Part shown: positions 2,833 through 45,819 of the stretch, in pieces
How positions within the stretch are numbered: position 1 is the stretch's first letter
How the letters are laid out: every line of letters starts with the position of its first letter
Sequence record: MK250028.1
Length of the DNA stretch: 64,000 nucleotides
Strand: one strand, 5' to 3'
Translations under genes and position numbers: made by a program
Notes under the pieces: model-generated
Seen by the model: only the letters and a program-made list of their open reading frames with translations
Told to the model about the DNA's origin: nothing
Databases searched by the model: none

Positions 2833-4071
2833 TTACTTATCCATTTTTGACCAATATAAATCTTCATCAACTAAATCAATAAGTCCCGACTAATATACTT
2901 TCCAATCGGTTTTTGAATATACATGGTCTTTTACTTTATCATCGTCGTAATCTAATTTATATTGTATTATAATAAAATTACCTTTTTCATCTTTTCCTTT
3001 CTCTATAACTTTATTACTTGTCATATAATTTGATGAATAGTCAGATAAAGACTTTGCATTTAATTTATTATTTTCTTGTAAATGTGAAATTACTTTATTT
3101 ACAATAATATTTATAATTTCATGCATATCTTTTTTATTACTAAACTTATAATTAGGTATATTATAGTCTATTAAGAATTGTTTAAATAAATCCTCACCAT
3201 ATTTAAAACCATTATACTCCGATGGATTCATAATAAGTGGTTGCTGTTCCATTTTGAATAATTTAAATCCTAATTTTTTAAGATATAACAAAAATAGTTC
3301 AAATGTTTTTAAATTTTCACAAATTAAAGAATATCCAAGTATTACATTTTTACATAATTTTGTCAACTTAATAGGATTTTCATTATTATTTGTAACAAAT
3401 ATATTAATTTTACTATATAAATTTATATATTCTTCTTTAATAGGAATAACTTTATTTGGATCAATAACTTCTTTTCTAGTATCTCCAATAATTATATTTT
3501 TTGTTTTATGATATATATCATCTTCTGCGTTCAATATAATATTTTTTATTTTATACCCATTTTCTATATATGTGTTTATAAGATAAAACATTTGTAAAAA
3601 TAATTCATTACCTATATAATCATATGGTATAAACTCCATATTATAATGTGGTTGTCCCATATTAAATATAATATCTGTTATCACTTTATCATTAACATGT
3701 AATATACAATTTAAATCATATTTGTTTGTTCTACCAAATCCATAAATTTCAATTGTATCAATATCAATTGAATTATCATAGTCTTTAAACTTACAATTAA
3801 TCTGAAATTTTTTTACATTATTAAAATATCTTATATAATACTTATTTTTACATGCTTCATTAATATATATTAATCCTATATTGTAAAGATTTTCAGCCCT
3901 ATCAAAATTCACAAAACTATCAGGATATTCAGTGATATTATATGGTAGCTTTTTAAGCTATCTTATTTCATTATTATATAATTCCTATGATACTGTACGT
4001 TCTGGTGTATCTACAATATCGTCTATATCATCAAAAAGGGACTCAACTAATTTCTTTATTAATTTATTCAT
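2833..4071 (-). CDS. Hypothetical protein with N-terminal LVESLFDD motif (412 aa)
   Basis: ORF 2890..3912 extended through TAG at both ends; starts MNKLIKKLVESLFDDIDD at ATG 4071, TAA at 2833. Confidence 0.8.
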
Positions 4072-7000
4072 TTTGTATATTTTTGTTCTATTATTTTTAT
4101 AATAAATTTAATATTATCATAAGCAGGATCCGTATTTACAATAACTTCTCGTGTTCTATTTTCTTGAGTAGGCCAGCTATAAGATGAATTATATGTTTGC
4201 TTTATATTAAATTTAAAAGTTAATCTGTCAAAACTACAATTTATACCATTCTTATTGCTTTCTGTAACACTAAAACTATTAAAATACTACCAATATACAC
4301 CTACTGAATTATTTCCATTAAATGAAGAACACAAATAACTACTAAAATCATATGTACTTGTATCATTACTTCTTTCACTATATGATATATTAATTGTTTT
4401 TAATGTAATCGTATCATCATACTATTTATAACCTTCTATATAAAAACATGCACTATTTTTATCTGCATATGTTCTATTAAATACTGTTAACCCATTATCA
4501 GTACTTTTTTTATAACCATATAAATTTCTAGAATCTAATTGTCCACTTCCTGTTTTTACATTATATGTAAGTCTTGCTAACCATGTATATGAACTTTTTA
4601 TATTTGCTTCCTATACAGTTAAATTATATGTTTTTGTCTATTCTTTATTTACTTCTGTATCAGTTGTATTAAAAATATATTTTTCTGTGCTTCTATCTAA
4701 TGTTATTGATGGGTTACTCCCTTTATTCTTAAATGTACGATATGTTACTTTTACACGTCCATTACATAACTGACTCCACATATGACCATATAAATCTATG
4801 TAAATATATTTACATTTGTTTTCTAATAATGTATTACTAATCTATGCTAAAATTTCTTTCATATTAATAAATATAGATTCCTATGAACCTGATCTATTAT
4901 CTCCAGAAAAACCTAGTATATCTTCATATTCTGTATAATTGTTCGTTTGATGCCAATATTCAGTTGTACTTGGATATAAAGTCTCAGAAAATCCCATTGT
5001 TGTATTATTTAATATATATGTTTTATTATGAGATGTTATATTCATTTTAATATTTTTATTATTTGTAATATGTGTTATTGTATCCAAATCAGAACCAGTC
5101 AATTTATTTTTTTCTGATGGAATATGTGAACTACCAGCATTATTTAAAAATATATATTCAAATAATAAAAAATCAAATGAAGCTAATCCAATAGCAAACG
5201 CACTTGCTTGATTAATTAACATTATTTTATTGTCAACTGAACCTATATTATATTTTACCGTAAAATTAACACACCTCTCATAATCATAATCTGAGTCTTT
5301 TGGATTCTAACTAAATTTACATTTTAATTCTAATTTATCATCTTTTAATGATGTTTCTTCTGTTTTAAAATCAGCAAGATACTCATATGTCATATCACCA
5401 TCATTATATTTTTCATATGTAACTTCATAATGTGACTAATTAGTATCAATATATGTACCATTTTTTACTTTTGCATAATACTATAAATAAAAATAGCCTG
5501 AATCAGTAGCTTGCAATGCTAATTCTTCCATATCATCTTCAACTTTTGTTGAACCTCTCATATAATATGCATGAACAAATAATTCAAACTCTCCTGCACC
5601 TTGTGATAATGTTTTATCTGCTTTTGCTTGACTATCATGAAATGTATATGTAAATGTAAACGTTAATGTTCTATCTGTTGATGATATACCAATTTCAATA
5701 TTATATATACATCTTGTTCCTGATATTATAGGTTCAGGTATATTTATACTTGAATCTGAGCATGTAAGTTCACCGTCTGATTTTTCATCACCATTAAGTT
5801 CACCATAACACTCAAGAGTTATAGTTTCCCCTGCATTGTTTATTTTTCCATCTACTGTACCACTCGTTAAATTTATAACAGCATTAATATTTGATTTACC
5901 CTGATATATTATAAAAGTAGACAAATATTCTTTTGTAATATCACTATACTAATATTTTACTGTTATTTTATATATTTTATCAGAAGTTGTACTATCATTT
6001 TCAGGAATAGTAACAGTTATTTTATAACACGGTTTATCTTCATCTTCATATTTTTCTTTATCACTTCGTATTACACTTATATCATCACATGTTATATTAT
6101 AATGTGTTAAATTGTCATCAAATGATTTATCTGGTCCACCTTTAAAATATAGTGTCTATATAATCTTCTTACCATTTTTTCTATAATCGACATAATCAGA
6201 ACCGTTAAAATCGGGATTGTCTCTTATAATTACACTATACGTTGTGCCTGACTATTTAAGTGTGTCTGATGCATTTAACGACTCATTAATTGAAACTGTA
6301 GCAACTAAATTACGTTCATTCTCTGTGATATTATCTGTTACTGCATATGGATATGAATATACATTATCATCACTTTTTGTTATTTTTGAAAAATCAATTG
6401 ATATATTTTCATCGCCTAATGTTAATTTAAAATCATATTTTATTTTTGATAAATCTAATTTATTCTTTTGTTCTTTATCATCAGCTTTTGTTAAATAATA
6501 ATGTATATATATTATATCATTATTCTCATTCTTATTATTAGATATAGATGTTATTATTTTATTTCCATCCTTATTATAAAATCCAATATATAATGTATAA
6601 TTAGTAGTATTATATGCAAATCTTTTAATATATAAATAGTTTGATTTTCCAGTAGTATTTACCGACTTACCATTATTATAATTGTAATATGTATAATTTC
6701 GTTTATACTATAAACTATAAGTAGTATTTTCTGTTTTTGACGTTATATCACTTAACTAAACAGTAAATTCATAATAATTATCAGTATCATTAAATTCTGG
6801 GTTTTTTACAATAGTAATTTCATCATTTGATGATAAATAAATATCATCTTTTTTAATTGTTATATGATTTCCTTTAAGTTCACCGGTTTTTTTATCAAAT
6901 GGCTATTTATAATCTAAATCTATATGATCATTACAATATAATCCTAAATATAATGTTAATGTTTGTTCTGTAGGATCACAATATATATAATAATCATTTA

Positions 7001-10000
7001 TCTTTTTATAGATATTACCATCTTTATGTCTAATTCCATATATTTTATTGTTATTCGGCGTCTCATTATCTTCAATACTATCCTTAGGATCATCTACTAA
7101 ATACGATAAATTATATGCTCTTGTTGCTTCCTTTTGACATATCTATATAATCCTAGTAGTAGAAGATTCTTTATAATTGTTCTAATAATGAATGCAAAAA
7201 TAAAAATACTACTAAACATCATTAATATTTTCATTCATTGTTATTTCTTGACCTATATAATTAATATTTCCGACTTTTTCACTTGATTGTTCTGATATTG
7301 TATAATATGGTACATTAGATATTAGTGTATAAATTCCTAATTTATTTTTATAATAAAAATTCTTAAATGTTGTATCTATAAGTCTTTTACTAATATCCCT
7401 GTATTGATAAATAACATTATAATATATAATAAAATTTTTAACTTTTGTTGTATCAATATTATATATTACCACATTTGATGTATTAGGACTAGTTGACATT
7501 ATTCCTGCTTCTTTATCATTAATTCTATAATGTGATATATACGCATATTTATTTTTTGATGCAGTATATATCTATGAAGCATCATCATATAATGTATATA
7601 CTTTATCTTTGTATAAAACAAACTATGTATATGCATAATCAATATCTTTATACTTTTGTATATATTTTAATATAATTTTATTATCAAATGCTAATAAATT
7701 CTACGGTATATTTAAACAACCATAATAATAATCTTCATCTTCATTATATATTATATTAGAAGTATATGGCATTAAATTATTTTGTGACCATAAAGTTAAA
7801 TTATTTGTGTTATTAAGATTAATAGTTAAGTCACTATTATAGTTTCTTAAATCAATATTTACTAATTTAATATTTCCATTTTCAATAATTGACTCCTACA
7901 TATAATATTTAAAATATAATACAGTATCATGTAAAATATTTTCAATAATATAACTATCTTTTGTTGAGTTATTATATGTTAACTTATCATCTAAACTACT
8001 ATTACTATATAATTCTAAATTTAATTTTATATATGTTTGCTATAATGTTAATGTATCTTCTTCAATATTAGAATTAGTATTATACCTATATTTTCCTATA
8101 ATTATTAATTTTCTTATCCTTTGATTATTATTTACATTTGTGTTATCTATATTTTTTATATCTAATTTTATATTTGTATAATCTGAAGTATTAACTAATT
8201 TTATTTGTGAATTCAAAATATTATCTGAAGTATTGTCTATCACAGCAGAAGTTAAATATGTTGTATAGTATGCGTTTGAACTTGTTCCTTTATTTTTTTC
8301 TTCCTAATTATTATATAATATACCATAGCCTTTAACTATAAAATTACTATTACCTTCAAATGATATAATATTCGTATCAGATACAAGCTTACATTCATAC
8401 TATAGTGATTCCTATGTGATTTTAATATAATCGGTTCTATTAATTTCAGTATTTCCTAATATATATGATATTTGATAATAAAATTCTCTATTACCATTTA
8501 CATTATAATATTCATTTTTTAATCGAATATTTTGTGCACTAAGGAAATCATCGGTATCTTTAGTAGTTTCATATTCTATATTTTCTAAATCAAATAATGA
8601 ATTAGCAGATATAAATTTATCCTAATTTTTCTAATAGAAATTTATGTCGAATAAATTGCTATCAATCACTATAGATTTTTCATTATCATAAACATTAACT
8701 GCATTAAAAACCAATTTAATTTCACTAAATTGAGGAATACCACCTATTGTGTCAGTTGATAATTTTTCATTTATATTAACTTTAGTTTGCGTAGTATCAA
8801 AATGTTGTTGTATAAAAGTTATATTATTTAACTTTAATGTCGATAAACTTATATTTATATATATTTCTGGATTTATAAATTTAGTTAATAATGGGAACTA
8901 CAAATATAAATTTTTTTTATCAGTTGAATTTTCATTAATATCTTTAATATTATTATAATCAAAATCAGTTAAATTTTTATTTGTTCTCGTATAATTAATC
9001 TCATAATATTCTGTTATTTCTGTATTATCAATATATTTAATATTACTCATAGATGTAATTATATGTTGTCCGTCACTCGTTCTTGCATAATAATATAATG
9101 ATATATCTTTACCAAATGGTGTTACTTTAAAAACAGATGGTGAATCATAAAATTCATCATCAATTTCATAACATAGCTTCATATCCGTATCATATTTCTA
9201 TATTATAACAATTTCATTACTTTTAATTTTATTCTTATATATAACATATACTTTTACCTTCCTTTCATATAATGTATAATTAGGATTTATGATTAAATTT
9301 AAATTATACTGTTTGTCTATATATGATGTTATACCTGTTTGATAATTTAATTCATATGTATTATTAATAAACTCAAAATGAACATCCAAATCATCGCTTT
9401 GTGTATATTCATTATTTAAACTAAAAGTATATATTAATTTCTTTATTTCACCTTGATATAATATATCATCCGCATTTGTGTTATTGATTGAGTCAATACC
9501 TAATTTTATAACATAATTATTAAATCTTTGTGTAATATAATAATCTCTCTACTTAGAATTATATGTTGTTTTAAATATTACAGAAAATTTTAAATTTTTG
9601 GTAACTGTATTTATATTTTCATCGATTAAATAAATTAAATCTATTTCATTCTATACTGTTGTTCTTAATGATTTAATATTACTTGTATCTAATTGTTTGT
9701 CATTAATTAATAATGTAACATTAGACTAATTTATATCATTAAGAATTCCATAATATTTAATATGAAGTTCTTGTTCATTACCAGATATTTTACCTCCAAT
9801 TATATGTTCTGTTACTTTACCATTTTTATCAATCCAATTTTCTTTATTATTTAATTCATCAGTTTTTTGCTATTCAGTAGGAATAAATTCTAAACGTACA
9901 TCAACATCTTCATAAGGAGCTTGTGAAACTTTTGCATATATATGATTAATACCAGAAATAAAAGATGAATCTGCTGGTATATTATTACTAACAGCAAATT

Positions 10001-10268
10001 CCATTATACCTTTACGTAATTTCTTTTCTGTATTATCATTAATAGATGTAATAGTTAATTTATTATAATACTTATTTTCTGTTGTAAATTTATATCCAGT
10101 AATCCAATCAGGTTTATATATACATTCAATAGTAGATGTAATAGGTATATAGTTTTTTTCCAATACTGCATAATATTCCGTATCAGTACTGGTAAACTTA
10201 TTTGCTGGTAATATAGGTAATGTAATTGTGTCTGATAATAATTTATTAAATTTATAATCGTTCATCAT
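4068..10268 (-). CDS. Giant hypothetical protein (2066 aa), likely structural (fibre/adhesin-like)
   Basis: Seven track ORFs lie in the same frame. Codon-by-codon reading found about 35 TAG and no TAA/TGA between ATG 10268 and TGA 4068, which overlaps the next ATG (ATGA). Rich in N, Y, I and T. Confidence 0.85.
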
Positions 10269-12011: not shown

Positions 12012-12725
12012 TCAAATAATTAAGTTTTCAATATTTCCTAAATATTCAACATCATTTAAGTTAAATCTCTACTTTATGTTGTTATCAAACTTAACAATAC
12101 ATGTATTCATTTTTTCTTGTATAGAATGTAATGTACCAAATTTATCTTTAGATATAATATAAACTTTATTTTCCTATAATTTATTTTGTTTAAATTTATT
12201 ATAGTTTTCCTATGTTAATGGATATTTGGTTTTCTTATTCTACTTATTAGCGATAATTTTACCAAATACTCTTGGTACACCATCGAATGTTTTAATATTG
12301 TTAAAGTTAGCATAGAGATTTCCATGTATAATATATGGGAATGCAGTCCAATCAGGTAAGTTATTTCCTGTATAGTTACAAGAGCCATCTACCTCATCGA
12401 ATTTAAATAACTGCATTCCCATTCTATTTAATCCTTTATTAGAAAGGTATAAATTATCATGGACATCCACCAAAATACCATGACCTGTACATTTAATCTC
12501 ATAGTTCTCTACATCAAGTTCATCTAAAATTCGTTCGACTCTTGGTTTTATTTCTGTTTCTTCATATTCTGATGATATGTTGTCTGACAGTGTTGTATCA
12601 CTATCAAGCCCTAAAAAATCATCATCTTCATCATCAAAATCATCAAACAGAGATTCATTCAACTTTGAGATTTTTGTGTTGTTATATTTTCTTATTTTCT
12701 TATATTCTGGAACTGAAATAATCAT
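12012..12725 (-). CDS. LRR-like repeat protein with LNESLFDD N-terminal motif (237 aa)
   Basis: Repeats such as GNNLPDWTAFPYIIHGNLYANFNNIKTFDGVPRVFG; extends through TAG to TGA 12012. Confidence 0.7.
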
Positions 12726-12765
12726 AATTAAAAAATAAATAATATTTTATATTATTTATTTTTGT

Positions 12766-15327: not shown

Positions 15328-16368
15328 ATGAAAAAATTCAGCTTTGATAAATCTATATATAAATGTTTAAATGAATCTTTATTTGATGATACAGATGATA
15401 TATTATCCAATGGAAATACAAATAGTATATCAGACTTATATATTAATGACGATTATCTATTGGAAAAGTTTAATGAATTATATAGTAACCAAAAATTAGG
15501 TAAATATAATTTATTAGAATATCCTGTATTTAGTAAAATAGAAACATATAATATTAATGGAACTGATTATAAATTTATAGCCGAAGCATCTAAAAATGGC
15601 GGATATACAACAGGGTATCCAACAGGACTAAAATATTCTGGACTTTTCTGTTATTTTATAACAACATAGGAATTAATGGATTTTATTGATACTTATAATA
15701 TTATAATACAATATCCTGTGGATGATGGTAAATATGATATTTATAATTATATAACATATATATTAAATGATATAACAATACCACATAATTTTTTAAATAA
15801 TTTCCATTTATATGAACATGAAAACGTATAGCAAAAATCATATTCAATAGGATTAATATTAAATAATTGTAAAGTTATAGGACATGAATTAATTTCTTTA
15901 TTATAGTCGGGTAATCATAATTATTTAAATATCAAATATGTATTATTAAATAAATTACATATTAATTCATTAAATTTACCAAATATGACATATGGTTATC
16001 CATTAGAAATAACAAATTGTAATTAGTTAACAGATTTAAATATAAATTATAATATTAATAATTATACAGAAGGTTCATTATTAATAAAAAGTTGCAAAAA
16101 ATTATCAAATATAGAAATTAATGATAATTCAAAAATGGTACAGCTATTGAAATTAAAAATAGATAAATGTCCGAATATAAATACAGATACATTAATATTA
16201 CCAAATCATAATACTAAAATGTATAACGCATAGTTGTTTAATGATAAGACAAAATAGAGAAAAATAAAATTCAGAGGCGATATAGTAAAACAATTTTATA
16301 CAGAATTACATCCTGATTATAAATATAAATATTATCAATCCGGTTATAAAAATATGTACTGGTTATAA
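15328..16368 (+). CDS. LRR-like protein with LNESLFDD N-terminal motif (346 aa)
   Basis: Open through TAGs to TAA 16366; repeats LEITNCNQLTDLNI / LLIKSCKKLSNIEI / LKIDKCPNI. Confidence 0.7.
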
Positions 16369-16803: not shown

Positions 16804-19011
16804 TTAATTTCCACCGAATAACTTATCTAATTCTTCTTGTGACATTGCATCTACTGCATCATCACCATTTGTAGATGGTTCATCGTCTTTCTTATCATCT
16901 GATTTATCTTCATCAGAATCTGAATCACTATCATCTGAAGACTCATTATCATCTGTTGAATCGGAATCGTCATCAACAATTTGTCCACCAATCATATCTT
17001 CAAATTCTTCTTTAGTAATACCATATTCGTTATTCAAAACATCTGCAAGATCATTTACATAATCTGTATTTGTTAAAACAACTTTAACTGGTTTATCATC
17101 ACCATCTACATTATCATCTGTTGAATCATCTGCATTTGCATCATCAGAATCTGAATCACTGTCGTCTGAATCATCTGCATTTGCATCATCAGAAGAATCA
17201 TCATTATCATCTTCAAGTAATTTCTTGAACTTATTATAATGTAAAGACTCATTTGATGCATTATCATCTGTATCAGTTGAATCATCTGAATTTTCATCAT
17301 CAGAAGATATATCATCTGCATTGTCATCTGTTGACTCACTATCATCTTCAGAATCATCAGTTTCATCATCTTCATCTTCAAACTCAATAGCATCATCTGG
17401 AACACCAGCATCTACAAGAGATTGCTTAAGCTCATCTGCTGCTGCTTGATTTGCAACTGTAATTACAACACGTGATAACTCAACTTCTTCATCTGTATCT
17501 GGATTTTCATCTGTAGATGAATCATCAGCTTTATCCGTTGAACTATCATCTGCATTATCAGCATCATCACTTGCATCATCTGAACCTGTTGGATCTACTG
17601 GTAATGGTTCCAATGGATTATCTTGTGTTTCTTCATCCTCATTCAACTTAAGACCTTTAGCTTTAATTAATTTCTTATATGTTAAACGGTATGTAAGTTC
17701 TTCATCAAGAATATTCATTAACTTTTCTTTATTAAGAATTGAATCACGAAGTTCTCTCTTTGTTGATTTAGAAGCAGACTCATTCAAAGACTTATAAGAT
17801 TTCATAAGTTTTGTATGCTGTGCTTTAACGGTATTTAACAATTCAAGAAGTTCTTTTGCTGTATATTCTGTAATATTCTTACCATTAATAGTTTTCTTCT
17901 CATAAAGATTCTTCTTACCAGACTTCATTGCTTTACGAATGAACTCAAACTTCTCTGAACCAATTGATTCCTTTAATGCAAGAAGTTCTCTTCTTTTCTG
18001 TTGAAGTTTTGCGTTTTTATTAACAGGTTCACTCTTAGCTTTATTAATTGCACGATTAATAATAGATTCATTAAGTGTTGTTTTCTTTGCAGATTTTACA
18101 ATATCCTTTGTGGTAAGTCCATTCTTTCTCATCTTCAATGCTTCAGAAAGATTTACAAGACGTTTACCATTTCTTCTCTTTCCTGGACAACATCCTTTCT
18201 TTTTCTCAAGAAGCTTCTTTCTTTTTAAACGACGATCATTCTTTGATTCATAGCACTCAAACTCTTCATCTTCCATGCATTCATCAAATTCATCATCTGA
18301 ATCATTCAAAGAATCTTCATCTGCAAATTCTTCATCTGCATCTTCATATGTCTCATCATAAAGATCATCATCATCATCAAGTTCACCTTCTGCATCCATA
18401 TCTGCATATGCATCATCTCTTGCATCCAATGCATCTGGATCATTAGGATCTACCTCATCATAATCTGGAATCATATCATCATAATCATCTTCGTCATCAA
18501 GATAGTCATCATCAATAGACTCATCCATATCTACATAATCATCACCATATTCATCCTTCATATCATCAATAGCTGTATCTCTTGCATCATCATCTTCTGG
18601 AATATCAAGCCATTCACCTTCATCATCAAGGCCATAGTCTTCATCCATATCTTGATAATCATCGCCATACTCATCTTCCATATCTGCTTCAGCTGCAGCA
18701 CGTGCATCATCATCAGACTCTACATCGTCAAGTTCATCATCTGCGTCGTCATATGTAAAATAAGTATCAACATCATCAATATTATATTCGTCTTCAAAAA
18801 TATCAATAATATCATCTTGTGTAAGTCCGTCAATTACCATATATACGGTATCTCCATCCTCTTCCTTTGATACTGTAGCGTCTGCATTCGTATCTTCAAT
18901 ATGTGTAGCCAAATCATCCATATTACCTTGAAGTTCAGGATAATCATGAACAAGCTATACAACATCAATCTTTACAGGAAATGCATAACTTTCATTAAGT
19001 TTTCTTTTCAT
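16804..19011 (-). CDS. Very acidic protein with basic helical core (735 aa), possible prohead core/scaffold
   Basis: Starts MKRKLNESYAF (one TAG at codon 19). D/E-rich ends, K/R-rich middle, and repeated LNES/INES/LNED/LLED motifs. Confidence 0.55.
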
Positions 19012-19707: not shown

Positions 19708-22272
19708 TTAAATACCACGTTTACCAAATTTAGAAGTATCAATACCAATTAAATTCTTTAATGATATACCTCCTAATTTCTGCATTTCTGCAAAAGTCTT
19801 TAATATAAACTTGACATTTTGATTAAATACAACAAAAACAACATCTTTTCTTATTTTTGATGGAATTAATTTAAGTTGTTCCCAACCTGTATCTTCACCA
19901 TCTGTAAATACAATTATTGTTGTATGTTTCTCTCCATTATCGTAATAATATGGTTTCTTAAGTTTTGTAACACTTATAGTATTACCAGGAATATCTGTAC
20001 CACCAGAACCACCACGATCTCCAAGAAGTTCAAGACGTTTCTTTATAGGTGTCTTAATATTCCACATTGCTACATTTTCAGGAAGAATACGGCCTGTTGT
20101 AAAATATGCTCTGGCAGAATTCAATACCTTACATGTTTTCTCCATTGTACAAATTTCCTTGAATATCTGATAGAATATTCCATTTCCATTACCATACATA
20201 GAACCTGAATTATCTATAAGATAAAATATATTAGCCGCATTGTTTTCTTCAAATGGAACTTTCTTATATGGATTGAATCTATCATCACGCCATGATTGTG
20301 ACATTGTTCTTTTCGAACGTTTCATTTGTGTTCCCGCTTCCATTGCAGCTGTGAAATGTTTTCTTAACTTTTGTTTCCAGTTAGCCAATGATTGCATATT
20401 CTTTAATTTATCTGCAATATCATTAAGTTTATTTGCTAAATCAGGAGAAATATTTCTTAACTGATCCATGTGTTCTTCATTATACTTTCTTGATAATTCT
20501 TTAGGATCACATGTTAATTCTTCAGCTGTATAAGGATCACCAGATTCTTTTGCAATTTCTGCCATTTGTTCTTGTGACAACATATCGGCGCCACCAAATG
20601 TAGAAGATGTAGTAGTATCAAATTCTTTACCTTCCAATTGTTTCTGAACTTCTTCCTCATTAGGTCCCGCTTGCATATCTCTATCGATTTTATTTTTCAT
20701 ATCATCAATAGCGTTCTTGACATCCTTACGCGCTTGTTCACGTGCAGCTTTTTCTTCTGCAGACATTTGTCCAGAATTTCTACCGGATTTTGAATTGCCA
20801 GTTGAACCTTGATCAGACATATCACCATTCATTGATGAACCATCATTATCAGACGAACTATTACCAGATTGAGAATTACCTCGTTCATTTCCTTGTTCTC
20901 CTGATTGATTTCCATTACCAGTTTGTGAATCATTTCCTGAATTATCTCCTTCTTGATCATCACCTGAACCATTACCATTCTGATTATCATCTGAATCTTC
21001 ATCACCACTACCAGAACCTTTACCCATTGCTTTATCTAATTCTTTCTTTACTTCATCATTATAAGCATCTTGATATTCACTAGATTTATTTGTATTATCA
21101 GGCATTTGATCCATACCATAATCAGACATTGTATCTGGATCAGCTGCACTTAAATCTGTATCATCATAATTTGATGAACCTCCTTGTTGACTACCGTCGC
21201 CAGATTGCTGTTGTCCAGATTGACCTGACTGATTTCCAGAATCACTTTGACTTCCAGACTGACTAGATTGTTCACTCTGACCTTGTTGTCCTGATTGTGA
21301 TTGACTTCCAGATTGTCCTTGTTGACCATCTTGCTGTCCGGATTGTCCACCTTGTCCTTGTTGCTGTTGTGAACTACCACTACCTTGACCTTGTTGTCCT
21401 TGCTGTTGTTGATTATTAACAGGATTTTGATTAATAGGTTGATTTGGTGTAGAAACCTTATTATAGAAATAAGCATCAAAAATTAATTGCCATGGTTCCA
21501 TTCGGAATCTATCATCAAATATACCCTCACATTCTGCAGTTGCACCTGCAAAATATTTAGGAATTTGTTTTTCAAGATCTCTATTAATCTCTGCATCCAT
21601 GGCAATATTTGCCAATTGATGATTCTTTCCTCCTTGTGTTTCTGTTTTTCTTTCAGCTTGTTCTCTATGTCTATATATTTGATGATATGCCTCATGACAA
21701 ATAACATATAATACTAAACGTGCCATAGTAATAATTCTATCATTAGACGACATGCGTTTACCTTGTGCAAGCATTTCCTTTACTTGTCCTTTTCCTTTAT
21801 ATAAAAGTTGTTCAGCAAATATAGGATTAAACGCAATACGTACACCATCACTTGCCGCAGTATCAATATTAAATGTCCATAAAATAGGTTTATTAAATCG
21901 TCCAAGAATTGGTCCTAATTCCCTTGTACTTGCAGCTTGCGTCTTTGCCATTTCGCAAAATTGAGCAATCTCTGCAGGAACTATTTCCTCTTCTGTTTGA
22001 ACACCGGTTATTGCATCAGTTATCTTCACTTTTACAGGAACACGCATTTTAGCAACAGGTATTGCCATACCCATATCTGCCATTGTTTTCCCTTTATATA
22101 ACTTTCGTATATCAATACTCTTCTTTTTCATGAGTCTTCCCCATAATCCTTGAAGTTCTCGTTGTTTTTCTTCAGCAGTCTTCAACTTAATACCCATTGT
22201 TTGTTTAACAGTATTATTTGAATATGCTTCATATACTCGAGTTTTATTAGTTTTTAACTTTACTTTTACCAT
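19708..22272 (-). CDS. Putative metallopeptidase (DUF2201-like) + Q/G/S-rich linker + vWA domain protein (854 aa)
   Basis: TAASDG..IAFNP, HEAYH (HExxH), NIAMDAEIN; C-terminal MIDAS IDNSGS..GGT..FTDG. Confidence 0.85.
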   Translation of the reverse strand: MVKVKLKTNKTRVYEAYSNNTVKQTMGIKLKTAEEKQRELQGLWGRLMKKKSIDIRKLYKGKTMADMGMAIPVAKMRVPVKVKITDAITGVQTEEEIVPAEIAQFCEMAKTQAASTRELGPILGRFNKPILWTFNIDTAASDGVRIAFNPIFAEQLLYKGKGQVKEMLAQGKRMSSNDRIITMARLVLYVICHEAYHQIYRHREQAERKTETQGGKNHQLANIAMDAEINRDLEKQIPKYFAGATAECEGIFDDRFRMEPWQLIFDAYFYNKVSTPNQPINQNPVNNQQQQGQQGQGSGSSQQQQGQGGQSGQQDGQQGQSGSQSQSGQQGQSEQSSQSGSQSDSGNQSGQSGQQQSGDGSQQGGSSNYDDTDLSAADPDTMSDYGMDQMPDNTNKSSEYQDAYNDEVKKELDKAMGKGSGSGDEDSDDNQNGNGSGDDQEGDNSGNDSQTGNGNQSGEQGNERGNSQSGNSSSDNDGSSMNGDMSDQGSTGNSKSGRNSGQMSAEEKAAREQARKDVKNAIDDMKNKIDRDMQAGPNEEEVQKQLEGKEFDTTTSSTFGGADMLSQEQMAEIAKESGDPYTAEELTCDPKELSRKYNEEHMDQLRNISPDLANKLNDIADKLKNMQSLANWKQKLRKHFTAAMEAGTQMKRSKRTMSQSWRDDRFNPYKKVPFEENNAANIFYLIDNSGSMYGNGNGIFYQIFKEICTMEKTCKVLNSARAYFTTGRILPENVAMWNIKTPIKKRLELLGDRGGSGGTDIPGNTISVTKLKKPYYYDNGEKHTTIIVFTDGEDTGWEQLKLIPSKIRKDVVFVVFNQNVKFILKTFAEMQKLGGISLKNLIGIDTSKFGKRGI

Positions 22273-26702: not shown

Positions 26703-27959
26703 TTATTCATAAGAATTTTCATAATCTTTTAATTTTTCTTTCGCATATTCTATAGTTATATGAAATTCTTTTTCATTAGACGCCGGTAAATTATACATTG
26801 CATCATCCATAAGATTCTCTACTATTCCTCTTAACCCCCTAGCGCCTAATTTATTCTTAATGGATAACTTAACTATATAATCATAAACTTCATCATCTAT
26901 TATAAGTTCAATACCATCTAATTTAAACAACTTCTTAAATTGTTTAATAATAGCATTTTTCGGTTCTGTAAGAATTCTCTTCAAATCATCTTCAGTTAAA
27001 GGATTAAGATATGTAATAATAGGAAGTCTACCAATTAATTCAGGAATCAAACCATAATTCTTTAAATCTTCCGCATTTACATATTTAAATATGTTTTCTT
27101 TATTATCAGAAAAATATTTCTTATCCTTTGATACAAATCCTAATGTAGATTTATTAACTCGTCTCTCTATAATTTTATTCAAACCAACAAAAGCACCACC
27201 ACAAATAAATAAAATATTTTTTGTATCAACCTCTACCATTTTAGCATCCGGGTGTTTTCTTCCTCCCTTTGGAGGAACATTTACAACAGAACCTTCAATT
27301 ATTTTAAGTAATGCTTGTTGAACGCCTTCACCTGAAACATCTCTTGTTATAGATGGATTTCCTCCGGATTTCCTTGCAATCTTATCAATCTCATCAAGAA
27401 ATACTATTCCGTGTTCTGCTTTCTTAACATCATAATCACATGCTTGGAGAAGTCTTGTGATTGCAGTCTCAACATCATCACCAACGTATCCTGCTTCGGT
27501 GATAGAATTAGAATCCACTATACTAATTGGTACATCTAACATTTTAGCAATAGACTTAACCAAAAGTGTTTTACCAGTACCAGTGTCTCCCAAAAGTATA
27601 CAGTTACTCTTCTCAATCTCTACATCATCAAATCCTTTTTGTTTAATTCTCTTATAATGATTATAAACTGCAACTGCTAACCTTTGTTTCGCTTTATCCT
27701 GACCAATTACATATTGATCCAAAAATTCTTTAATCTCTGTAGGTTTTTTTACATCATCCTTATGAAAATTATCATCTGGTGGTAAAAACTGTGTATTATG
27801 ATTTACTATACTCAAATTCATATTGTAAATCTGGTCACAACATTCATTACAAATACTTCCATATTCACCATTAAAAAGTAATGCAACTTGGTCTTTCGTC
27901 TTACCACAAAATGAACACTTATTTTCTTTTTTATTTGTATCTTTCTTTTTTTCTGCCAT
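26703..27959 (-). CDS. clpX: ATP-dependent Clp protease ATP-binding subunit ClpX
   Basis: CSFCGK..C..C zinc domain, [18 protein letters not shown]...[17 protein letters not shown] docking loop, GARGL. Confidence 0.97.
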
Positions 27960-28678: not shown

Positions 28679-29812
28679 TTAATAATTTATTTGTTTTAAT
28701 CCTTCTGCTAAAATATTTAATGAAGCATTATAATCTCTATCAATCTCTTTACCACAATGTGGACATATCCATTCTCTCTAACTTAATTTTAAATCTTTAT
28801 AAATATGTCTACAATTATGGCAAGTTTTAGATGAAGGATAGAATCTATTTATTATAACCAGCTATTTTCCATACCATCTACATTTATATTCTAACTATTT
28901 TCTAAATTCAAATAAAGATAACTCTTGAATAGATTTAGCAAGTTTATGATTAGACATCATTCCATTTACATTTAAATCTTCAATACAGATAACTTGATTT
29001 TCATTAACTAGTTTTGAAGTGATTTGATGTAAATATGTATTTCTCTAATTTTTTATTTTCTCATGAACTTTTGCAATTTTAATTCTAACTTTATTCCGAT
29101 TATTACTTCCTTTCTATTTCTTACTTAACAACCTCTATAATTTCTTTAATTTCTTTTCTTGATTTCTATAGAAATGTTTATTTTCATATCTATTTCCATT
29201 AGAATCAACGATAAAATCTTTTATTCCTAAATCTAAACCTATTACGGTATCTAATTTTTCTTTTTGTATAATATTATAATATATTAAAATAAACAAATAA
29301 TATTTTTCTGTAGAAGTTTTAATAAGCGTAATTGAATGTATTTTATTTTGATTATGATTTAAATATATTTCATCTTTTTTAGAACATTTAAATAATATAT
29401 TCTTTAACTATTTAATTAATGTTATCCTATTACCATTAATTTTCTTCTTTTTAAATTTAAATATAGTTCTTGTAAATCTACAACTTTGCTTAATATCTTT
29501 CTTTGATTTGAATTTAGGATAACCATTATGTAATTTAAAGAAATTATCATATGCTTTAATTAAATCCTACATTGATTGCTATAAACACATAGCATATACA
29601 TCATTTAAAAAAGTATATTCATCTTGTTTTTTTAAATTAGTCAAATATTTACCTAATTGTGTCCATGATACAACTTGTTTATTCTACTCATACTATGACT
29701 TCTTATAATCCAATAATTTATTATATATAAGTCTACAACAACCTAACTGTTTAGAAATAAATTCTTTCTAAACATTATCAGGATATATTCGTATTTTAAT
29801 ATATTTTAACAT
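28679..29812 (-). mobile_element. tnpB: IS200/IS605-family TnpB RNA-guided nuclease (377 aa), no transposase
   Basis: KIRIYP..G..R..YN helix, YPKFKSK, RuvC GLDLG / IEDL / RDYNAS, zinc finger SSKTCHNC..WICPHCG; 12 in-frame TAG. Confidence 0.93.
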
Positions 29813-29820
29813 AATATTTT

Positions 29821-30351
29821 TTAAAATTTTAAACCATGTATCATTTCAAAAACTTTAATCTTATTGTTTATACCGTAAATAATATTATCAATAGTTGAGA
29901 TGGTATCTTTCATATATTTACAGAAATTATCCAATAAATCAACTGATTCTTTTTCTGCTGATAACTGAGATTCAATCTGTAAATTAATAGCACTTTCATT
30001 CGTATATCTAATTCCAGATGAACCTGATTTTAAAGCTAAATAAATTCCTGATGCTTTAGACTTATAATCTCTCGTTTGCTTTTGTAATATCTTTGCTGTT
30101 CCATAAAATAAGTCTATTGCTTCTTGTCTCTTTAAATAAACTTCATTCATCAAACCATCAATAGATTTCAAATCTTTCATTCGTTCATTTAAATTCTTAA
30201 TAATATCTGTCCACTTATCTTGAAGATTACTCAATGAATTTTCCAATGAATTTTGTTGTGAATTAACATTATTATTCTGATTAGTTTGTTGAACTTGATT
30301 ATTATCTATAGAATTATTATTTTCTGTTACTACTTCATTTTCTTTATCCAT
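29821..30351 (-). CDS. UvsY-like recombination mediator
   Basis: The helical C-terminus LLDNFCKYMKDTISTIDNIIYGINNKIKVFEM resembles the T4 UvsY C-terminus by eye; no TAG. Confidence 0.5.
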   Translation of the reverse strand: MDKENEVVTENNNSIDNNQVQQTNQNNNVNSQQNSLENSLSNLQDKWTDIIKNLNERMKDLKSIDGLMNEVYLKRQEAIDLFYGTAKILQKQTRDYKSKASGIYLALKSGSSGIRYTNESAINLQIESQLSAEKESVDLLDNFCKYMKDTISTIDNIIYGINNKIKVFEMIHGLKF

Positions 30352-30436
30352 AAATCAAAAGTTTATAATAATACTTTATATATTATATCATTTAATAAAA
30401 ATAAAGTTTTATTCTCAAAAAGAATTTCAATCAATA

Positions 30437-30575: not shown

Positions 30576-30702
30576 TAATTTTTCAAATCTAAATTTAATT
30601 TTCTTTATTTAATTTCTTAAATATCTATCATTACCTTAATATCTTAATATTAATTATACTTCACTTTTCAAAAAAAGTCTACTTTTTGTTTAAATATTTT
30701 TA

Positions 30703-30993
30703 NNNNNNNNNNNNNNNNNNNNNNNNNNNNNNNNNNNNNNNNNNNNNNNNNNNNNNNNNNNNNNNNNNNNNNNNNNNNNNNNNNNNNNNNNNNNNNNNNN
30801 NNNNNNNNNNNNNNNNNNNNNNNNNNNNNNNNNNNNNNNNNNNNNNNNNNNNNNNNNNNNNNNNNNNNNNNNNNNNNNNNNNNNNNNNNNNNNNNNNNNN
30901 NNNNNNNNNNNNNNNNNNNNNNNNNNNNNNNNNNNNNNNNNNNNNNNNNNNNNNNNNNNNNNNNNNNNNNNNNNNNNNNNNNNNNNNNNNNNN
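30703..30993. other. Assembly gap (291 N)
   Basis: Run of N. Confidence 1.
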
Positions 30994-31020
30994 TTAATTG
31001 AAACTAAATAATTTAGATAT

Positions 31021-31791
31021 ATGGCAGATAGTAAAAATAATACAAAAAAGGTAAAAACTGGTGTAGTTGAGTCTATTGATGATCCAACATGTTCAGGAAG
31101 AGTAAAAGTTAGGGTTGCAGGTTTACATGATAACATATCAACAGAGAATTTACCATGGTGTAATTACGCGGGAAGTGGTATGTTTTCAGGTTCAGGTGGT
31201 GGATAGATTTCTATACCACGTGTAGGAACAAAGGTAAGAGTTAGATTTGCATAGGATGATGTAAACTCCATGGAATGGTATGGAACAAATACATTGGACA
31301 GAAAACTTTCAGAGGAATTGGCGTCTGATTATGCAGGTTCATAGGTTCTTCTTTATGACTCGGAATATGATTTGTCTATTAAGTTTCAACCAGGTTCTGG
31401 TTTAGCTTTATATTATAAAGGTTCTTATATGTAGATGACACCTGATAATACTATAACTATTCATTATGGTCCTGACGAGACAACAGGTGTACAAATATAG
31501 TTAACAGACGGTAAGGTTTATATATAGGCACCATAGTAGATTAATATAACATCAGGTAATGAAGTTAATATAGAGGGAAAGGTTATAACATTAAATGGAA
31601 CATCTGCTGTCCGTATAAAAGGAACAACACCTAATACATGCGCTGTTAATGCTACACAACTTATGACATTGTTATAGACGATGGCAGCTAATATCGATAC
31701 AAAATTAGGTTAGTCAAAATCTGGTATATGTGCCGCTACTGTTTCAGGTTCTAAGGAAAAAATAATGAATCAACATATCCTTTATATTTAA
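31021..31791 (+). CDS. Baseplate hub/spike protein, T4 gp5/VgrG-like OB-fold (256 aa)
   Basis: GVVESIDDP..SGRVKVRVAGLH..ENLPW..IPRVGTKVRVRF; open through TAGs to TAA 31789. Confidence 0.8.
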
Positions 31792-37355: not shown

Positions 37356-37784
37356 TCATCTATCATATTTTCCACCAAAAATTTTTGACATATATTCACA
37401 TAAACTTGCATATAAATCTGCATTTGGTAATTTTACTTGTTTATATGTAAAGAAATAATATTCATTTTTTTCTACTAATATATTATTTAATTTTCTTAAA
37501 AAATTAATATTAGTATCAGGTGAAACTGTTATTACCCATGCGGTAAATTCATCAAAGTAATATACTCCTTTTATTGCATGATTTCTTAAAAATTCCTCAT
37601 ATTCTTCAAATGTATTATTTGAAATTAAATATATATAATCGCCTTTACTTGTTTCTTTGCATAAATATGTTGCTTCGTTCTCATCATCTTCATCAACATA
37701 ATCTTCATTAAGTTTTCCTTTTACTGTTTTAGAAATACTTTTCATTATTGACTCATAAAGTCTTTTCTTTTGTATTTTATCCAT
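37356..37784 (-). CDS. Hypothetical protein with LYES...LNE N-terminal leader
   Basis: MDKIQKKRLYESIMKSISKTVKGKLNEDYVDEDD; ends in TGA. Confidence 0.75.
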   Translation of the reverse strand: MDKIQKKRLYESIMKSISKTVKGKLNEDYVDEDDENEATYLCKETSKGDYIYLISNNTFEEYEEFLRNHAIKGVYYFDEFTAWVITVSPDTNINFLRKLNNILVEKNEYYFFTYKQVKLPNADLYASLCEYMSKIFGGKYDR

Positions 37785-42002: not shown

Positions 42003-42012
42003 CTTAATTTAA

Positions 42013-44349: not shown

Positions 44350-44382
44350 ATAATGTAAATATCAAATTGTTTATTTGAAATT

Positions 44383-45819
44383 ATGATAATTAAATCACTA
44401 TATGAATCATTGGTAAATTGTTTGAATGAAGCACGTGTTTAGAGAACTATAGATAAGAAACTTTGGTTAAGTATAGCATCTACATGTTCACGAAATAAAT
44501 CAACTGAAGCTGAAAATATTAAACCACGATCAACATAGACGAAAGAATAGTTGTTACCGAGATATGTAGCTGCTCTTCTTATAATGAAGAAGCAATGTCC
44601 AGAAAATGAATAGGATATTGATGATATAAAGACATTTAAATTAGTCGGTAAACGTTTACTATAGTTAGGTTGCACAATAGATGAAATAAAGCAAGAGTAT
44701 ATTAATAACGGAGGTAAATTAGTTACTAATATAATTAATGTAAATTCTTAGAAAACTACATAGGTTAATCAAAAACTTAATCAAGAAGTAAAGAAAGAAG
44801 ATTAGGTTAAAGTTGATAAAACAAAAGAAGTAAAGAATGAGAAACCAAAGGTATAGAAACAATTACCGCCAGGTATTAAATCTTATGATGAAGTATATGA
44901 TTTTGTAAAACGTTCATATAATGATTTATATGAAATCTGCAGTGAAATATATGATATTCTTGATATGACATATTTTACATTAAAGAAATCTTTTTATAAG
45001 ATAGAAACTCCTAAATATAAATTGTATTTCAGAGATGTTACAACAGATGAGAATCAGAAACTTTATTACAATGATAAACATTGTGTTTATATAACATGGA
45101 TAAAAATTGTTAAAACTAAAGTAGTTGAAGGTACATTTTGTATATTAACTAATAATATGACAATTAATGATGACCCTATTGGTAATACTATATAGTTAGA
45201 TGATAATACAGTAATTACTAAACAATAGTTATATGAAATATGTTTAACTATATTAGCAAAATTAAGATATGCTACATAGAGTAATTATAATAATCCATTA
45301 TTACCTAAAATAAAAGAGAAAACAACTTCATTCGGTATATTTGGAAATAAATCACGTGATTTTAATTCTATAATAGATAAAGGTGAAATTGAAAAGATAT
45401 TACCATTTGTAATTAAGAAATATAATACCATGAAAAAATGTAATGATATTCTTGAATTATTTTTATATAAAGCAAGGATGGGTAATAGAAATAGTGGTAA
45501 AGTATTAGAATTAGATGAACCTATATATACAGGTAAATTCTTTAATTCATAGGAAACTTTTGATTTGATTGGATATGGCTTTAAACCAGCCGCATAGTTT
45601 ATTATTCAATTTAAGTATGATGATAAATATACGACACAAATAATATATGGATATGAAGCTAGAGAATATGGACCTCCAGCAAATATTGCATCGTATTATA
45701 CATCTAACAAAGATTTTTCAGCATATAGGGTAGATATGAAAGAATTACAAAAAGCTTTATGGTATACTATAGCTGTTTTATTATATTATAAAAATAATTA
45801 TAGTAATGTAATTAAATAA
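44383..45819 (+). CDS. Hypothetical protein with LYES..LNEA leader (478 aa)
   Basis: MIIKSLYESLVNCLNEARV; open through TAGs to TAA 45817. Confidence 0.75.

What the first reader, a model, noticed from the sequence alone, without database searches (positions are those of the whole stretch)
2833..45819. Shared basic leader ending in (L/I/V)xE(S/A/G/D) on unrelated proteins: candidate capsid-targeting propeptide
SEEN: MNKLIKKLVESLFDD (4071), ..KISKLNESLFDD (12725), ..YKCLNESLFDD (15328), MKRKLNES (19011), ..KTRVYEAY (22272), MDKIQKKRLYES..KLNED (37784), MIIKSLYES..CLNEA (44383), and five such sites (INES, INEG, ITES, VNET, LNEA) before the AAA domain of 22383..25175. The exact hexapeptide ESLFDD recurs in three otherwise dissimilar proteins. 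KNOWN: the T4 prohead protease gp21 cuts after (I/L)xE, and T4 internal proteins have a short N-terminal capsid-targeting sequence removed this way. INFERENCE: these proteins are packaged in the head, matured by the prohead protease and probably injected. The motif would predict the injected proteome and could be a cargo-loading tag.
Basis: partly seen in the sequence, partly recalled or inferred. Interest (0 to 1): 0.7.

Follow-up and report, generated by a model that had tools for sequence, protein, structure and literature searches.

The report
Capsid-targeting leader peptide in Lak megaphage
A giant gut phage (Lak megaphage of Prevotella) puts the same short N-terminal tag, ending in a Leu-x-Glu protease site, on many unrelated late proteins, in the same layout as the tag phage T4 uses to load proteins into its head and then trim them, so the tag predicts which proteins of this uncultured phage are head-packaged.

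Summary
The window is a Lak-B Prevotella megaphage in which TAG encodes Gln. Three window proteins start with M-N-K-x-I-K-K-L-x-E|S-L-F-D-D-x-D-D. The same leader heads 7 proteins with unrelated bodies in the Lak-B composite, 9 in a divergent Lak genome and 7-8 in Lak-A/C. SLFDD occurs almost only at ORF starts in all six frames. L-x-E-S in the first 30 residues is about 5-10-fold enriched, with Leu peaking at residue 8-9. Leu (P3) and Glu (P1) are invariant, P2 is free, and codons vary synonymously. The genome encodes a Peptidase_S77 (T4 gp21-type) prohead protease with conserved catalytic His and Ser and flanking LNE sites. The gp23-type capsid protein has LNE at residues 62-64 (T4: LTE 63-65). 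T4 gp24 starts MAKINELLRE|S, and the T4 capsid-targeting sequence is 10 residues with processing set by residues 8 and 10. Carriers share a late-promoter-like ATAAATA element. Best reading: a T4-type capsid-targeting propeptide cut by the prohead protease, a new member of a known kind. Cleavage and packaging are inferred. Injection is not shown, and some carriers look like binding-repeat proteins. The assembly gap touches none of these genes.

The parts
2833..4071 (-). SLFDD-class carrier, 412 aa (3 TAG=Gln). Leader MNKLIKKLVE|SLFDDIDD is encoded at 4018..4071; L8-V9-E10-S11 at 4039..4050.
   Evidence: The ortholog in G002/L005 keeps the leader at 16/18 identical while the body is 36% identical. 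No Pfam or PHROG family.
12012..12725 (-). SLFDD-class carrier, 237 aa (4 TAG). It has a 24-residue leader ...KISKLNE|SLFDDFDDEDDD; LNES at 12651..12662.
   Evidence: ATAAATA element 34 nt upstream. The first 30 mature residues have net charge -12.
15328..16368 (+). SLFDD-class carrier, 346 aa (6 TAG). It has a 16-residue leader MKKFSFDKSIYKCLNE|SLFDDTDD; LNES at 15367..15378.
   Evidence: The G002 ortholog has ...YKKLYE|SLFDDTDG. ATAAATA 37 nt upstream.
16804..19011 (-). Short-leader carrier, 735 aa: MKRKLNE|SYAF... (LNES at 18988..18999). A second, internal group of sites: LSEA 18139..18150, LNES 18064..18075, LKES 17965..17976.
   Evidence: The leader is identical in the G002 ortholog. ATAAATA 38 nt upstream.
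37356..37784 (-). Small paralog family (125-166 aa, 3-4 copies per genome) with a two-site leader MDKIQKKRLYE|SIMKSISKTVKGKLNE|D. LYES at 37749..37760; LNED at 37701..37712.
   Evidence: TAG-free, yet it has ATAAATA 28 nt upstream. Leader 63% and body 26% identical to its G002 relative.
44383..45819 (+). Carrier, 478 aa (14 TAG), with a two-site leader MIIKSLYE|SLVNCLNE|ARVQRTID... LYES at 44398..44409; LNEA at 44422..44433.
   Evidence: Paralogs of this body carry four different leader types, all ending in (L/I)-N-E or L-Y-E just before the body; in two of them LNE directly abuts the conserved ARVQRTID start. ATAAATA 37 nt upstream.
24594..25088 (-). Cluster of six (I/V/L)-x-E-(S/G/T/A) sites (INES, INEG, IDET, ITES, VNET, LNEA) in residues 30-194 of the 930-aa MoxR-like AAA protein (22383..25175), upstream of its P-loop. 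Possibly a multiply cut pro-region.
   Evidence: One search gives positions; second-densest cluster in the proteome after the protease itself; [LIV]NE[SAGT] 4 against about 0.1 expected, rank 1 in both genomes. AAA domain. ATAAATA 35 nt upstream.
22225..22272 (-). N-terminus MVKVKLKTNKTRVYE|AYS of the 854-aa DUF2201/HExxH-like protein (19708..22272). A weak candidate site with Val, not Leu, at P3.
   Evidence: The protein is 78% identical overall to its ortholog, so conservation of the site is uninformative. Late-type ATAAATA 35 nt upstream.
30703..30993 (.). Assembly gap (N). Not part of the feature. It lies in the divergent intergenic region where gene orientation and GC skew switch.

Best explanation
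The leader is a T4-type capsid-targeting propeptide.

Late in infection, about 20 Lak proteins (7-9 with the full M-N-K-x-I-K-K-L-x-E|S-L-F-D-D-x-D-D tag, the rest with shorter or two-site variants ending L-x-E|S/A/G) are made with a basic N-terminal leader. The leader takes them into the assembling prohead core. The phage's gp21-family serine protease (Peptidase_S77) then cuts after the invariant Glu. For most carriers this is Glu10 or Glu11. That removes the basic leader and releases a mature protein that begins with the acidic SLFDD box. The same protease trims the major capsid protein after LNE64 and cuts itself at LNE21 and at INE/LNE sites just after its catalytic domain.

Shown here: the motif, its strict N-terminal position, its portability, its protein-level conservation, the presence and catalytic integrity of the protease, and late-type co-regulation.

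Inferred: targeting, cleavage and head location.

Not supported either way: injection into the host.
For: (1) Motif and position. 15 aligned leaders have P3 Leu 15/15, P1 Glu 15/15, free P2 (N, M, L, V, I, Y), P1' Ser/Gly, P3' Phe 15/15 and P4' Asp 15/15. Leu of L.E[SAG] peaks at residue 8-9: 9 against about 0.3 expected, and 13 against about 0.7.
(2) T4 match. gp21 cuts after L/I-X-E. The CTS is the first 10 residues of IPIII, with processing set by residues 8 and 10. gp21 has its own LIE-9 (PMC9026906). Real T4 sequences: gp24 MAKINELLRE|S, gp23 LTE65|A, Alt MELITE|LFDED.
(3) Protease. Peptidase_S77 in G002 and G001 (E 3e-16; 9.6e-15); PHROG 207 head maturation protease 2e-30; 32% identical to T4 gp21, E 9e-11. 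The His and Ser that are Ala in 5JBL are conserved.
(4) The Gp23-family MCP has AKLNE|DAF at 62-64 plus AYES and IYES in its N-terminal region.
(5) Portability. Carrier bodies are unrelated by BLAST. One body family carries four leader types ending in (L/I)-N-E or L-Y-E; in two paralogs LNE directly abuts the conserved ARVQRTID body start.
(6) Selection. Leader against body identity is 89/36, 83/55, 88/62 and 63/26%. The P1' Ser uses both TCN and AGY codons.
(7) Conserved in Lak-A, Lak-B, Lak-C and the G002 type.
(8) Co-regulation. ATAAATA 28-39 nt upstream in 16/22 and 21/34 carriers against 43/172 and 92/445 others. This also holds within TAG-free genes. SLFDD carriers in Lak-B are 7/7 TAG-containing.
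(9) The window's block 1-25 kb is 7.4 kb from the MCP gene. Other carriers flank the protease gene.
(10) The only in-frame non-Lak KKLxESLFDD in IMG/VR lies in another S77 protease-scaffold fusion, just after its catalytic domain, and is conserved with variable P2.
Against: No proteomic, structural or genetic evidence exists, because Lak phages are uncultured. The most conserved part (SLFDDxDD) lies on the P' side and would stay on the mature protein, which the simple T4 CTS model does not require. So the helix may act as a whole, or be cut elsewhere, or not be cut. Annotated carriers (PARCEL/DUF285 1.6e-61, LRR_4, FISUMP-like 1.6e-7) resemble surface-binding modules, which is unexpected for internal proteins. 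In G002 the TAG enrichment of carriers is not significant. A few listed carriers are expected by chance (about 2-4 per genome), for example a radical-SAM-like protein. Amphipathicity of the leader is only moderate.
Confidence: 0.75

Rival explanations
1. The leader is an uncleaved docking helix. The whole roughly 20-residue basic-then-acidic segment binds a common assembly partner (scaffold, portal, inner body, or even a tail or decoration site) and stays on the protein. L-x-E would be part of the binding face rather than a protease site.
For: The P' side (SLFDDxDD) is as conserved as the P side. Most leaders have an above-average helical hydrophobic moment. Carriers with binding-repeat domains might be external.
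Against: P2 between the invariant Leu and Glu is completely free, as expected for an L-x-E protease site. The same L-x-E-(S/A/D) occurs at the T4-equivalent capsid-protein maturation point and around the protease domain. Variants lacking SLFDD still end in L-x-E exactly at the leader-body junction. The distance from Met1 is fixed at 8-10 as in the T4 CTS.
Confidence: 0.13
2. The leader is a recognition tag (degron or unfolding tag) for a phage-encoded AAA+ machine: the ClpX homolog at 26703..27959 or the MoxR-like ATPase at 22383..25175. It would control turnover or remodelling of late proteins rather than capsid loading.
For: A ClpX homolog with zinc finger and AAA_2 domain lies in the window. 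ClpX is known to recognise N-terminal motifs (own knowledge).
Against: Nothing links the motif to ClpX. The motif geometry matches the gp21 system point by point. Tagging a dozen late, structural-module proteins for degradation is hard to rationalise.
Confidence: 0.05
3. There is no protein-level function. The shared start would be a nucleotide-level element (translation initiation or mRNA signal), or a remnant of recent duplication or recombination among paralogs.
For: The genome is 75% A+T and carriers share an upstream promoter-like element, so some 5' similarity could be regulatory.
Against: Codons differ synonymously, including TCN against AGY for Ser and TTR against CTN for Leu. Bodies are unrelated. 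The leader is held across Lak clades whose bodies have diverged to 26-36% identity. The leader varies in length (7-24 residues) while keeping L-x-E|S.
Confidence: 0.03

Closest known systems
Phage T4 capsid targeting sequence (CTS) and gp21-processed N-terminal propeptides (IPI/II/III, Alt, gp24)
   Same: A short N-terminal leader (10-20 residues) shared by otherwise unrelated head proteins. It ends in L/I-x-E with the cut after Glu. Leu/Ile is at residue 8 and Glu at residue 10. A Peptidase_S77 protease is encoded in the genome. The capsid protein is cut about 65 residues in. The protease carries its own sites. T4 gp24 MAKINELLRE|S against Lak MNKLIKKLVE|S; T4 Alt ITE|LFDED against Lak LxE|SLFDD.
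   Different: Lak has an invariant acidic box S-L-F-D-D-x-D-D on the P' side, and T4 leaders as a group do not. There are more carriers: 7-9 strict plus about 10-15 variants per genome, against about 6-9 processed proteins in T4. Two-site long leaders (LYE|S...LNE|) also occur. The host is Prevotella, the genome is about 550 kb, and TAG is recoded. Nothing has been verified experimentally.
Propeptides of phiKZ-like giant phages (phiKZ gp175, 201phi2-1, SPN3US gp245 substrates)
   Same: A gp21-related protease cuts after Glu in many (8-19) head and ejection proteins. Propeptides are proposed to target proteins into the prohead. Paralogs with diverged bodies keep identical N-termini (PMC5694885; PMC9026906).
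   Different: Their motif is S/A/G-x-E and most propeptides are over 100 residues. Lak uses Leu at P3 and 7-27-residue leaders, so it is closer to T4 than to phiKZ.
S77 protease-scaffold fusions of phages in the 100-270 kb contig range (family of L065, 1220 proteins)
   Same: L-x-E-(S/A) sites sit at fixed positions after the catalytic domain. One subclade has L(N/D)E|SLFDD, the same octapeptide as the Lak leaders.
   Different: There the box is internal, in the protease-scaffold linker, not an N-terminal tag on cargo. SLFDD is lost in more distant members.
Encapsulin cargo-loading (targeting) peptides
   Same: In concept, a short conserved peptide directs diverse cargo to the inside of an HK97-fold shell (own knowledge).
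   Different: Encapsulin tags are usually C-terminal, are not removed by a protease, and have unrelated sequences. This is an analogy only.

Membership tests
T4-type capsid targeting sequence / gp21-processed propeptide | A short leader (about 10-20 residues) at the extreme N-terminus | tested here: met
   SLFDD lies 10-24 residues after Met1 in 5/5 and 6/7 six-frame occurrences. Leu of L.E[SAG] peaks at residue 8-9.
T4-type capsid targeting sequence / gp21-processed propeptide | The leader ends in L/I-x-E, with residues 8 and 10 as processing determinants | tested here: met
   P3 Leu 15/15, P1 Glu 15/15, P2 free. T4 rule from PMC9026906.
T4-type capsid targeting sequence / gp21-processed propeptide | The genome encodes a gp21-family (Peptidase_S77) prohead protease with catalytic His and Ser | tested here: met
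   Alignment to T4 gp21 and 5JBL. The gene is outside the window (G001:181356-183101).
T4-type capsid targeting sequence / gp21-processed propeptide | The same leader sits on otherwise unrelated proteins | tested here: met
   BLAST groups of leader-trimmed bodies contain only cross-genome orthologs. Distant homology below BLAST sensitivity was not excluded.
T4-type capsid targeting sequence / gp21-processed propeptide | The major capsid protein carries the same site at the end of its N-terminal pro-region | tested here: met
   The Gp23-family MCP has LNE at 62-64. T4 gp23 has LTE at 63-65.
T4-type capsid targeting sequence / gp21-processed propeptide | The leader is actually removed by the protease in proheads | not testable with these tools
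   Needs proteomics or biochemistry. The complex prediction gave no verdict.
T4-type capsid targeting sequence / gp21-processed propeptide | The leader is necessary and sufficient to load a protein into the head | not testable with these tools
   Needs reporter fusions. Only indirect support: the late-type promoter and head-module location.
phiKZ-type propeptides | Cleavage motif S/A/G-x-E and mostly long (over 100 aa) propeptides | tested here: not met
   P3 is Leu in 15/15 and leaders are 7-27 residues. Definition.
Injected (ejection) proteins | Delivered into the host cell with the DNA | not testable with these tools
   T4 precedent is mixed: IPs and Alt are ejected, while gp24 and gp23 are structural. 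Some Lak carriers have binding-repeat domains.

The most novel reading that the evidence does not exclude
The Lak leader is a bipartite cargo tag. A basic 10-mer is removed by the S77 protease. An invariant acidic box, S-L-F-D-D-x-D-D, stays on the mature protein and has a role of its own. That role could be docking to the scaffold or inner capsid, charge-driven co-assembly with the basic leaders of neighbours, ordering of ejection, or an extended P'-side exosite of S77 proteases. The exosite idea is hinted at by T4 Alt ITE|LFDED and by L(N/D)E|SLFDD in an unrelated S77 protease-scaffold lineage. If so, the tag marks at least 20 proteins, including a MoxR-like AAA ATPase with a multiply cut pro-region, as the packaged proteome of the largest known gut phages, and it could be used as a portable loading tag.
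Probability: 0.3. Interest if true: 0.7.

Novelty: new member of a known kind. Interest (0 to 1): 0.55.

Why it matters
Lak megaphages (about 550 kb, TAG recoded, common in human and animal guts) have never been cultured. Most of their roughly 600 genes are ORFans, and the Lak papers I checked do not discuss head maturation or packaged proteins. A sequence tag that follows the T4 rule gives a direct, testable prediction of which ORFans enter the prohead and where they are cut. It tells metaproteomics exactly which semi-specific N-termini to look for. It shows that T4-style L-x-E maturation, rather than the phiKZ S/A-x-E style, operates in the largest known phage capsids. It also offers a candidate loading tag. 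The conserved P'-side acidic box is a feature the T4 model does not explain.

Tried and rejected
- TGA=Trp (table 4) does not join the fragmented ORFs. TAA reassignment only inflates spurious ORFs.
- No whole genome is held for the window. I used the near-identical contig G001 outside the window, plus the complete divergent Lak genome G002.
- Pfam, PHROGs and NCBIfam on the window's carriers gave no family.
- Complex prediction of the protease domain (residues 22-177) with a carrier's first 40 residues gave no verdict: score 0.12 against a mark of 0.34, controls not run. This is no evidence either way.
- Helical amphipathicity of the leader is only moderately above background, and 2 of 15 exceed the 95th percentile. 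It is not used as evidence.
- The loose pattern [LIV].E alone is barely enriched at N-termini.
- Conservation of the sites in the 854-aa and 930-aa proteins is uninformative because the whole proteins are 78-82% identical between genomes.
- IMG/VR pattern scans: every strict hit is in Lak-size contigs or Lak fragments, except L065 (real, in-frame, in an S77 protease) and L095 (chance, GC 0.52, no ORF).
- Full-text search for ESLFDD, SLFDD and LFDED found nothing relevant.


Full report
Gap and code first. The N run at 30703-30993 lies where gene orientation and GC skew switch, between 29821..30351(-) and the baseplate-hub-like gene 31021..31791(+). The only frames that cross it are open merely because they run through N. 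None of the finding's ORFs is near it. The near-identical IMG/VR contig G001 spans 64,006 nt between the window's 100%-identical end anchors, against 64,000 nt here, so the estimated gap length is consistent. The frame across it is unknown and does not matter here.

The genome itself shows this. The longest ORF rises from 862 to 2066 aa with TAG sense, while TGA=Trp does nothing. Pfam matches to the protease and the portal run through 2 and 6 TAGs. A complete Lak genome has two tRNA(CTA). Over 205 ortholog pairs, TAG aligns with TAG 168 times, with Gln 114/107 times, and next with Lys 34/26 times. The window is a Prevotella Lak megaphage of clade B: its sheath-like protein is 99.4% identical to Lak-B1 and others. 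Code 15 and TAG use in structural regions are published for Lak (PMC6784885).

The observation. The motif is much sharper than described. Using the window plus G001 flanks (249 kb, 'Lak-B composite') and the complete, divergent Lak genome G002 (554 kb), the strict form is M-N-K-x-I-K-K-L-x-E|S-L-F-D-D-x-D-D. In all six frames SLFDD occurs 5 and 7 times, and 5/5 and 6/7 of these lie 10-26 residues after the first Met of an ORF. Lak-A1 and Lak-C1 have 8 and 7 matches to E(S/T)LFDD against 0 for the reversed control, all at the start of 235-450+ aa ORFs.

L-x-E-S within the first 30 residues is found in 19/194 proteins (about 1-2 expected from internal windows or shuffled N-termini) and in 22/479 (about 3.4-4 expected). 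The excess remains when the ESLF cases are removed. The Leu of L-x-E-(S/A/G) peaks at residue 8-9: 9 against about 0.3 expected, and 13 against about 0.7.

What the leader looks like. In 15 aligned leaders P3 Leu and P1 Glu are invariant, while P2 between them takes N, M, L, V, I or Y. P1' is Ser (13) or Gly (2), P2' is Leu/Met, P3' is Phe 15/15, P4' is Asp 15/15, and P5' is Asp/Glu. The part before the site is basic (+2 to +5). The 30 residues after it are very acidic (-5 to -13, against a proteome background of -0.5 +/- 3.1). Ser at P1' is encoded by TCT, TCC, TCA, TCG and AGT, and the Leu positions by TTA, TTG, CTT, CTA and CTG, so selection acts on the peptide, not the DNA.

Orthologs in G002 keep the leader while bodies drift: 89% against 36%, 83% against 55%, 88% against 62%, 63% against 26%. 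After trimming the leader, SLFDD carriers fall into separate BLAST groups that contain only the cross-genome ortholog. So the tag sits on at least 7 (Lak-B composite, a partial genome) and 9 (G002) unrelated bodies.

Besides the strict class there are variants:
- a 7-residue MKRKLNE|S on the 735-aa protein;
- a small paralog family (125-166 aa) with a two-site leader ...LYE|SIMKSVSKTVKKKLNE|;
- the ARVQRTID family, whose paralogs carry four different leader types ending in (L/I)-N-E or L-Y-E; in two paralogs LNE directly abuts the conserved ARVQRTID start of the body.
This last family marks L-x-E| as a module boundary.

The protease and the capsid protein. Lak genomes encode a Peptidase_S77 domain (T4 gp21 family): E 3e-16 in G002 and G001, 9.6e-15 by Pfam and 2e-30 to PHROG 207 'head maturation protease' on the 581-aa ORF. 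It is 32% identical to real T4 gp21 (E 9e-11). The His and Ser that are replaced by Ala in the crystallised T4 protein 5JBL are both present (GELDHP, VSSRA). Its own N-terminus reads ...LQPLTLNE21|S(A). Directly after the catalytic domain come RINE|SLG and YLNE|SVS, followed by a long acidic linker. Proteome-wide it has the densest cluster of such sites.

The Gp23-family major capsid protein lies 7.4 kb beyond the window's left end. Its N-terminal region contains AYES, IYES and AKLNE64|DAF. The portal shows no such leader. Several carriers flank the protease gene, and the window's 1-25 kb block adjoins the capsid gene.

Comparison with T4, using real sequences and the literature. gp21 cuts after L/I-X-E. 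The capsid targeting sequence is the first 10 residues of IPIII: targeting depends mainly on residues 4 and 7, and processing on residues 8 and 10. gp21 has LIE-9. Propeptides range from 7 (Alt) to 65 (gp23) residues (PMC9026906). CTS-type leaders of 10-20 residues sit on gp24, the IPs and Alt, whereas phiKZ-like phages use S/A-X-E and mostly long propeptides (PMC5694885).

From the annotated T4 record:
- gp24 MAKINELLRE|STTT
- gp23 ...FLTE65|AEIG
- gp21 MNEPQLLIE9|T
- gp67 MEGLIE|A
- gp22 MLKEQLIAE|A
- Alt MELITE|LFDED

The Lak MNKLIKKLVE|SLFDD shares M1, K3, a hydrophobic residue at position 4, L8, E10 and S11 with gp24. Its capsid protein has the site one residue from T4's position. Alt's mature end LFDED echoes SLFDD. 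Every sequence-level defining feature of the T4 system that I could test is met. The phiKZ-type definition is not met, because P3 is Leu and the leaders are short.

Independent support.
(a) Regulation. ATAAATA, the core of the T4 late promoter TATAAATA (own knowledge), sits 28-39 nt upstream of start codons. It precedes 41/79 TAG-containing against 18/115 TAG-free genes (p 8e-8), and 86/205 against 27/274 (p 2e-16). It precedes 16/22 and 21/34 carriers against 43/172 and 92/445 others. Within TAG-free genes alone it precedes 4/8 against 14/107, and 8/17 against 19/257. Five of the six window carriers have it. The sixth (2833..4071) overlaps the stop of the upstream 2066-aa gene and is probably co-transcribed.
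(b) In IMG/VR, K-K-L-x-E-S-L-F-D-D occurs only in Lak-size contigs or Lak fragments, plus one 8.3-kb non-Lak contig (L065). There it lies in frame inside a Peptidase_S77-coiled-coil fusion (E 1e-11), next to a Gp23-family capsid gene, about 80 residues after the catalytic Ser. Relatives down to 75% identity keep L(N/D)E|SLFDD, and P2 varies again. More distant members of this 1220-protein family keep L-x-E-(S/A) at two fixed positions but lose SLFDD. A second scan shows about one chance hit per pattern (L095), so L065 is suggestive, not proof.
There are six sites in residues 30-194, second only to the protease. Four of these are (L/I/V)-N-E-x against about 0.1 expected, rank 1 in both genomes. 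That protein and its 854-aa DUF2201/HExxH neighbour also have the late element.

What remains inferred. Cleavage, head location and, above all, injection are not shown. In T4 the same kind of leader marks ejected proteins (IPs, Alt) but also shell and core proteins. The few Lak carriers with recognisable domains are PARCEL/DUF285 repeats (1.6e-61), LRR_4, and a FISUMP-like domain (1.6e-7, below the curated cut-off). These are binding modules, which fit decoration or adhesion at least as well as injected effectors. The invariant acidic box lies after the predicted cut and is unexplained by the T4 model. A few of the roughly 22-34 L-x-E-(S/A/G) carriers per genome are expected by chance.

No paper in the library describes proteolytic maturation or targeting leaders in Lak or Jug phages, and none contains the peptide.

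Verdict. It is unproven for 'injected'. This is a new member of the T4 CTS kind with an extra conserved acidic box.

Noticed in passing
window, 28-38 nt upstream of the ATGs at 12725(-), 15328(+), 19011(-), 22272(-), 25175(-), 37784(-), 44383(+); genome-wide in G001 and G002: A late-promoter-like element ATAAATA (often AATAAATAATA) at a fixed 28-39 nt from start codons. It is strongly associated with TAG-containing genes (p 8e-8 and 2e-16). It resembles the T4 late promoter TATAAATA, which suggests gp55-like late transcription in Lak phages.
   Followed up: partly
L065:4935-7175(-) (IMGVR_UViG_3300028591_001844, 8.3 kb, standard code): A non-Lak phage encodes a Peptidase_S77 + coiled-coil scaffold fusion. 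It has LNMNE|S and KKLNE|SLFDDPD about 40-80 residues after the catalytic Ser. The family has 1220 members, with conserved L-x-E-(S/A) sites after the protease domain.
   Followed up: partly
window 22383..25175(-) and 19708..22272(-): A MoxR-like AAA ATPase with a 240-residue N-terminal extension unusually rich in protease-type sites. Next to it is an 854-aa DUF2201/HExxH metallopeptidase-like protein. Both sit in the head module and have the late element. Their role in head assembly is unknown.
   Followed up: partly
window 28679..29812(-); window 58866..59159(+); G002:348696-349376: An IS605-type TnpB (OrfB_IS605 1e-25, Cas12f-like TNB 3e-25) with 12 in-frame TAG codons, so this mobile-element gene uses the phage's code. 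A related N-terminal fragment lies at 58866..59159. In G002 a similar fragment lies just downstream of the head-module gene whose ORF there is 157 aa, against 339 aa in Lak-B.
   Followed up: no
window about 30,000-31,000: Cumulative GC skew reaches its minimum and gene orientation flips exactly at the assembly gap. This could be a replication origin or terminus, or simply the divergent transcription point.
   Followed up: no
window 26703..27959(-), 54548..55024(+), 61054..63875: The phage encodes ClpX (zinc finger + AAA_2), SmpB (2.7e-55) and a tRNA cluster. The cluster includes a 92-nt tRNA-Trp(CCA) and an odd tRNA called Asn(ATT).
   Followed up: no
L038:6446-6518 (G002:246446-246518); L041:11810-11884 and 12719-12791: G002 has two tRNA(CTA) near the portal gene. 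It also has a tRNA with anticodon TTA, which would read TAA and which ARAGORN calls 'Stop'.
   Followed up: no
window 48804..52565(+): The tail-sheath-like protein is 1253 aa, about twice the length of T4 gp18. Only its C-terminal 100 residues match the sheath Pfam domain.
   Followed up: no
window 4068..10268(-): A 2066-aa ORF with 35 TAG codons, no leader and no Pfam or PHROG match lies between two SLFDD carriers. Its stop overlaps the start of the 412-aa carrier (ATGA).
   Followed up: no
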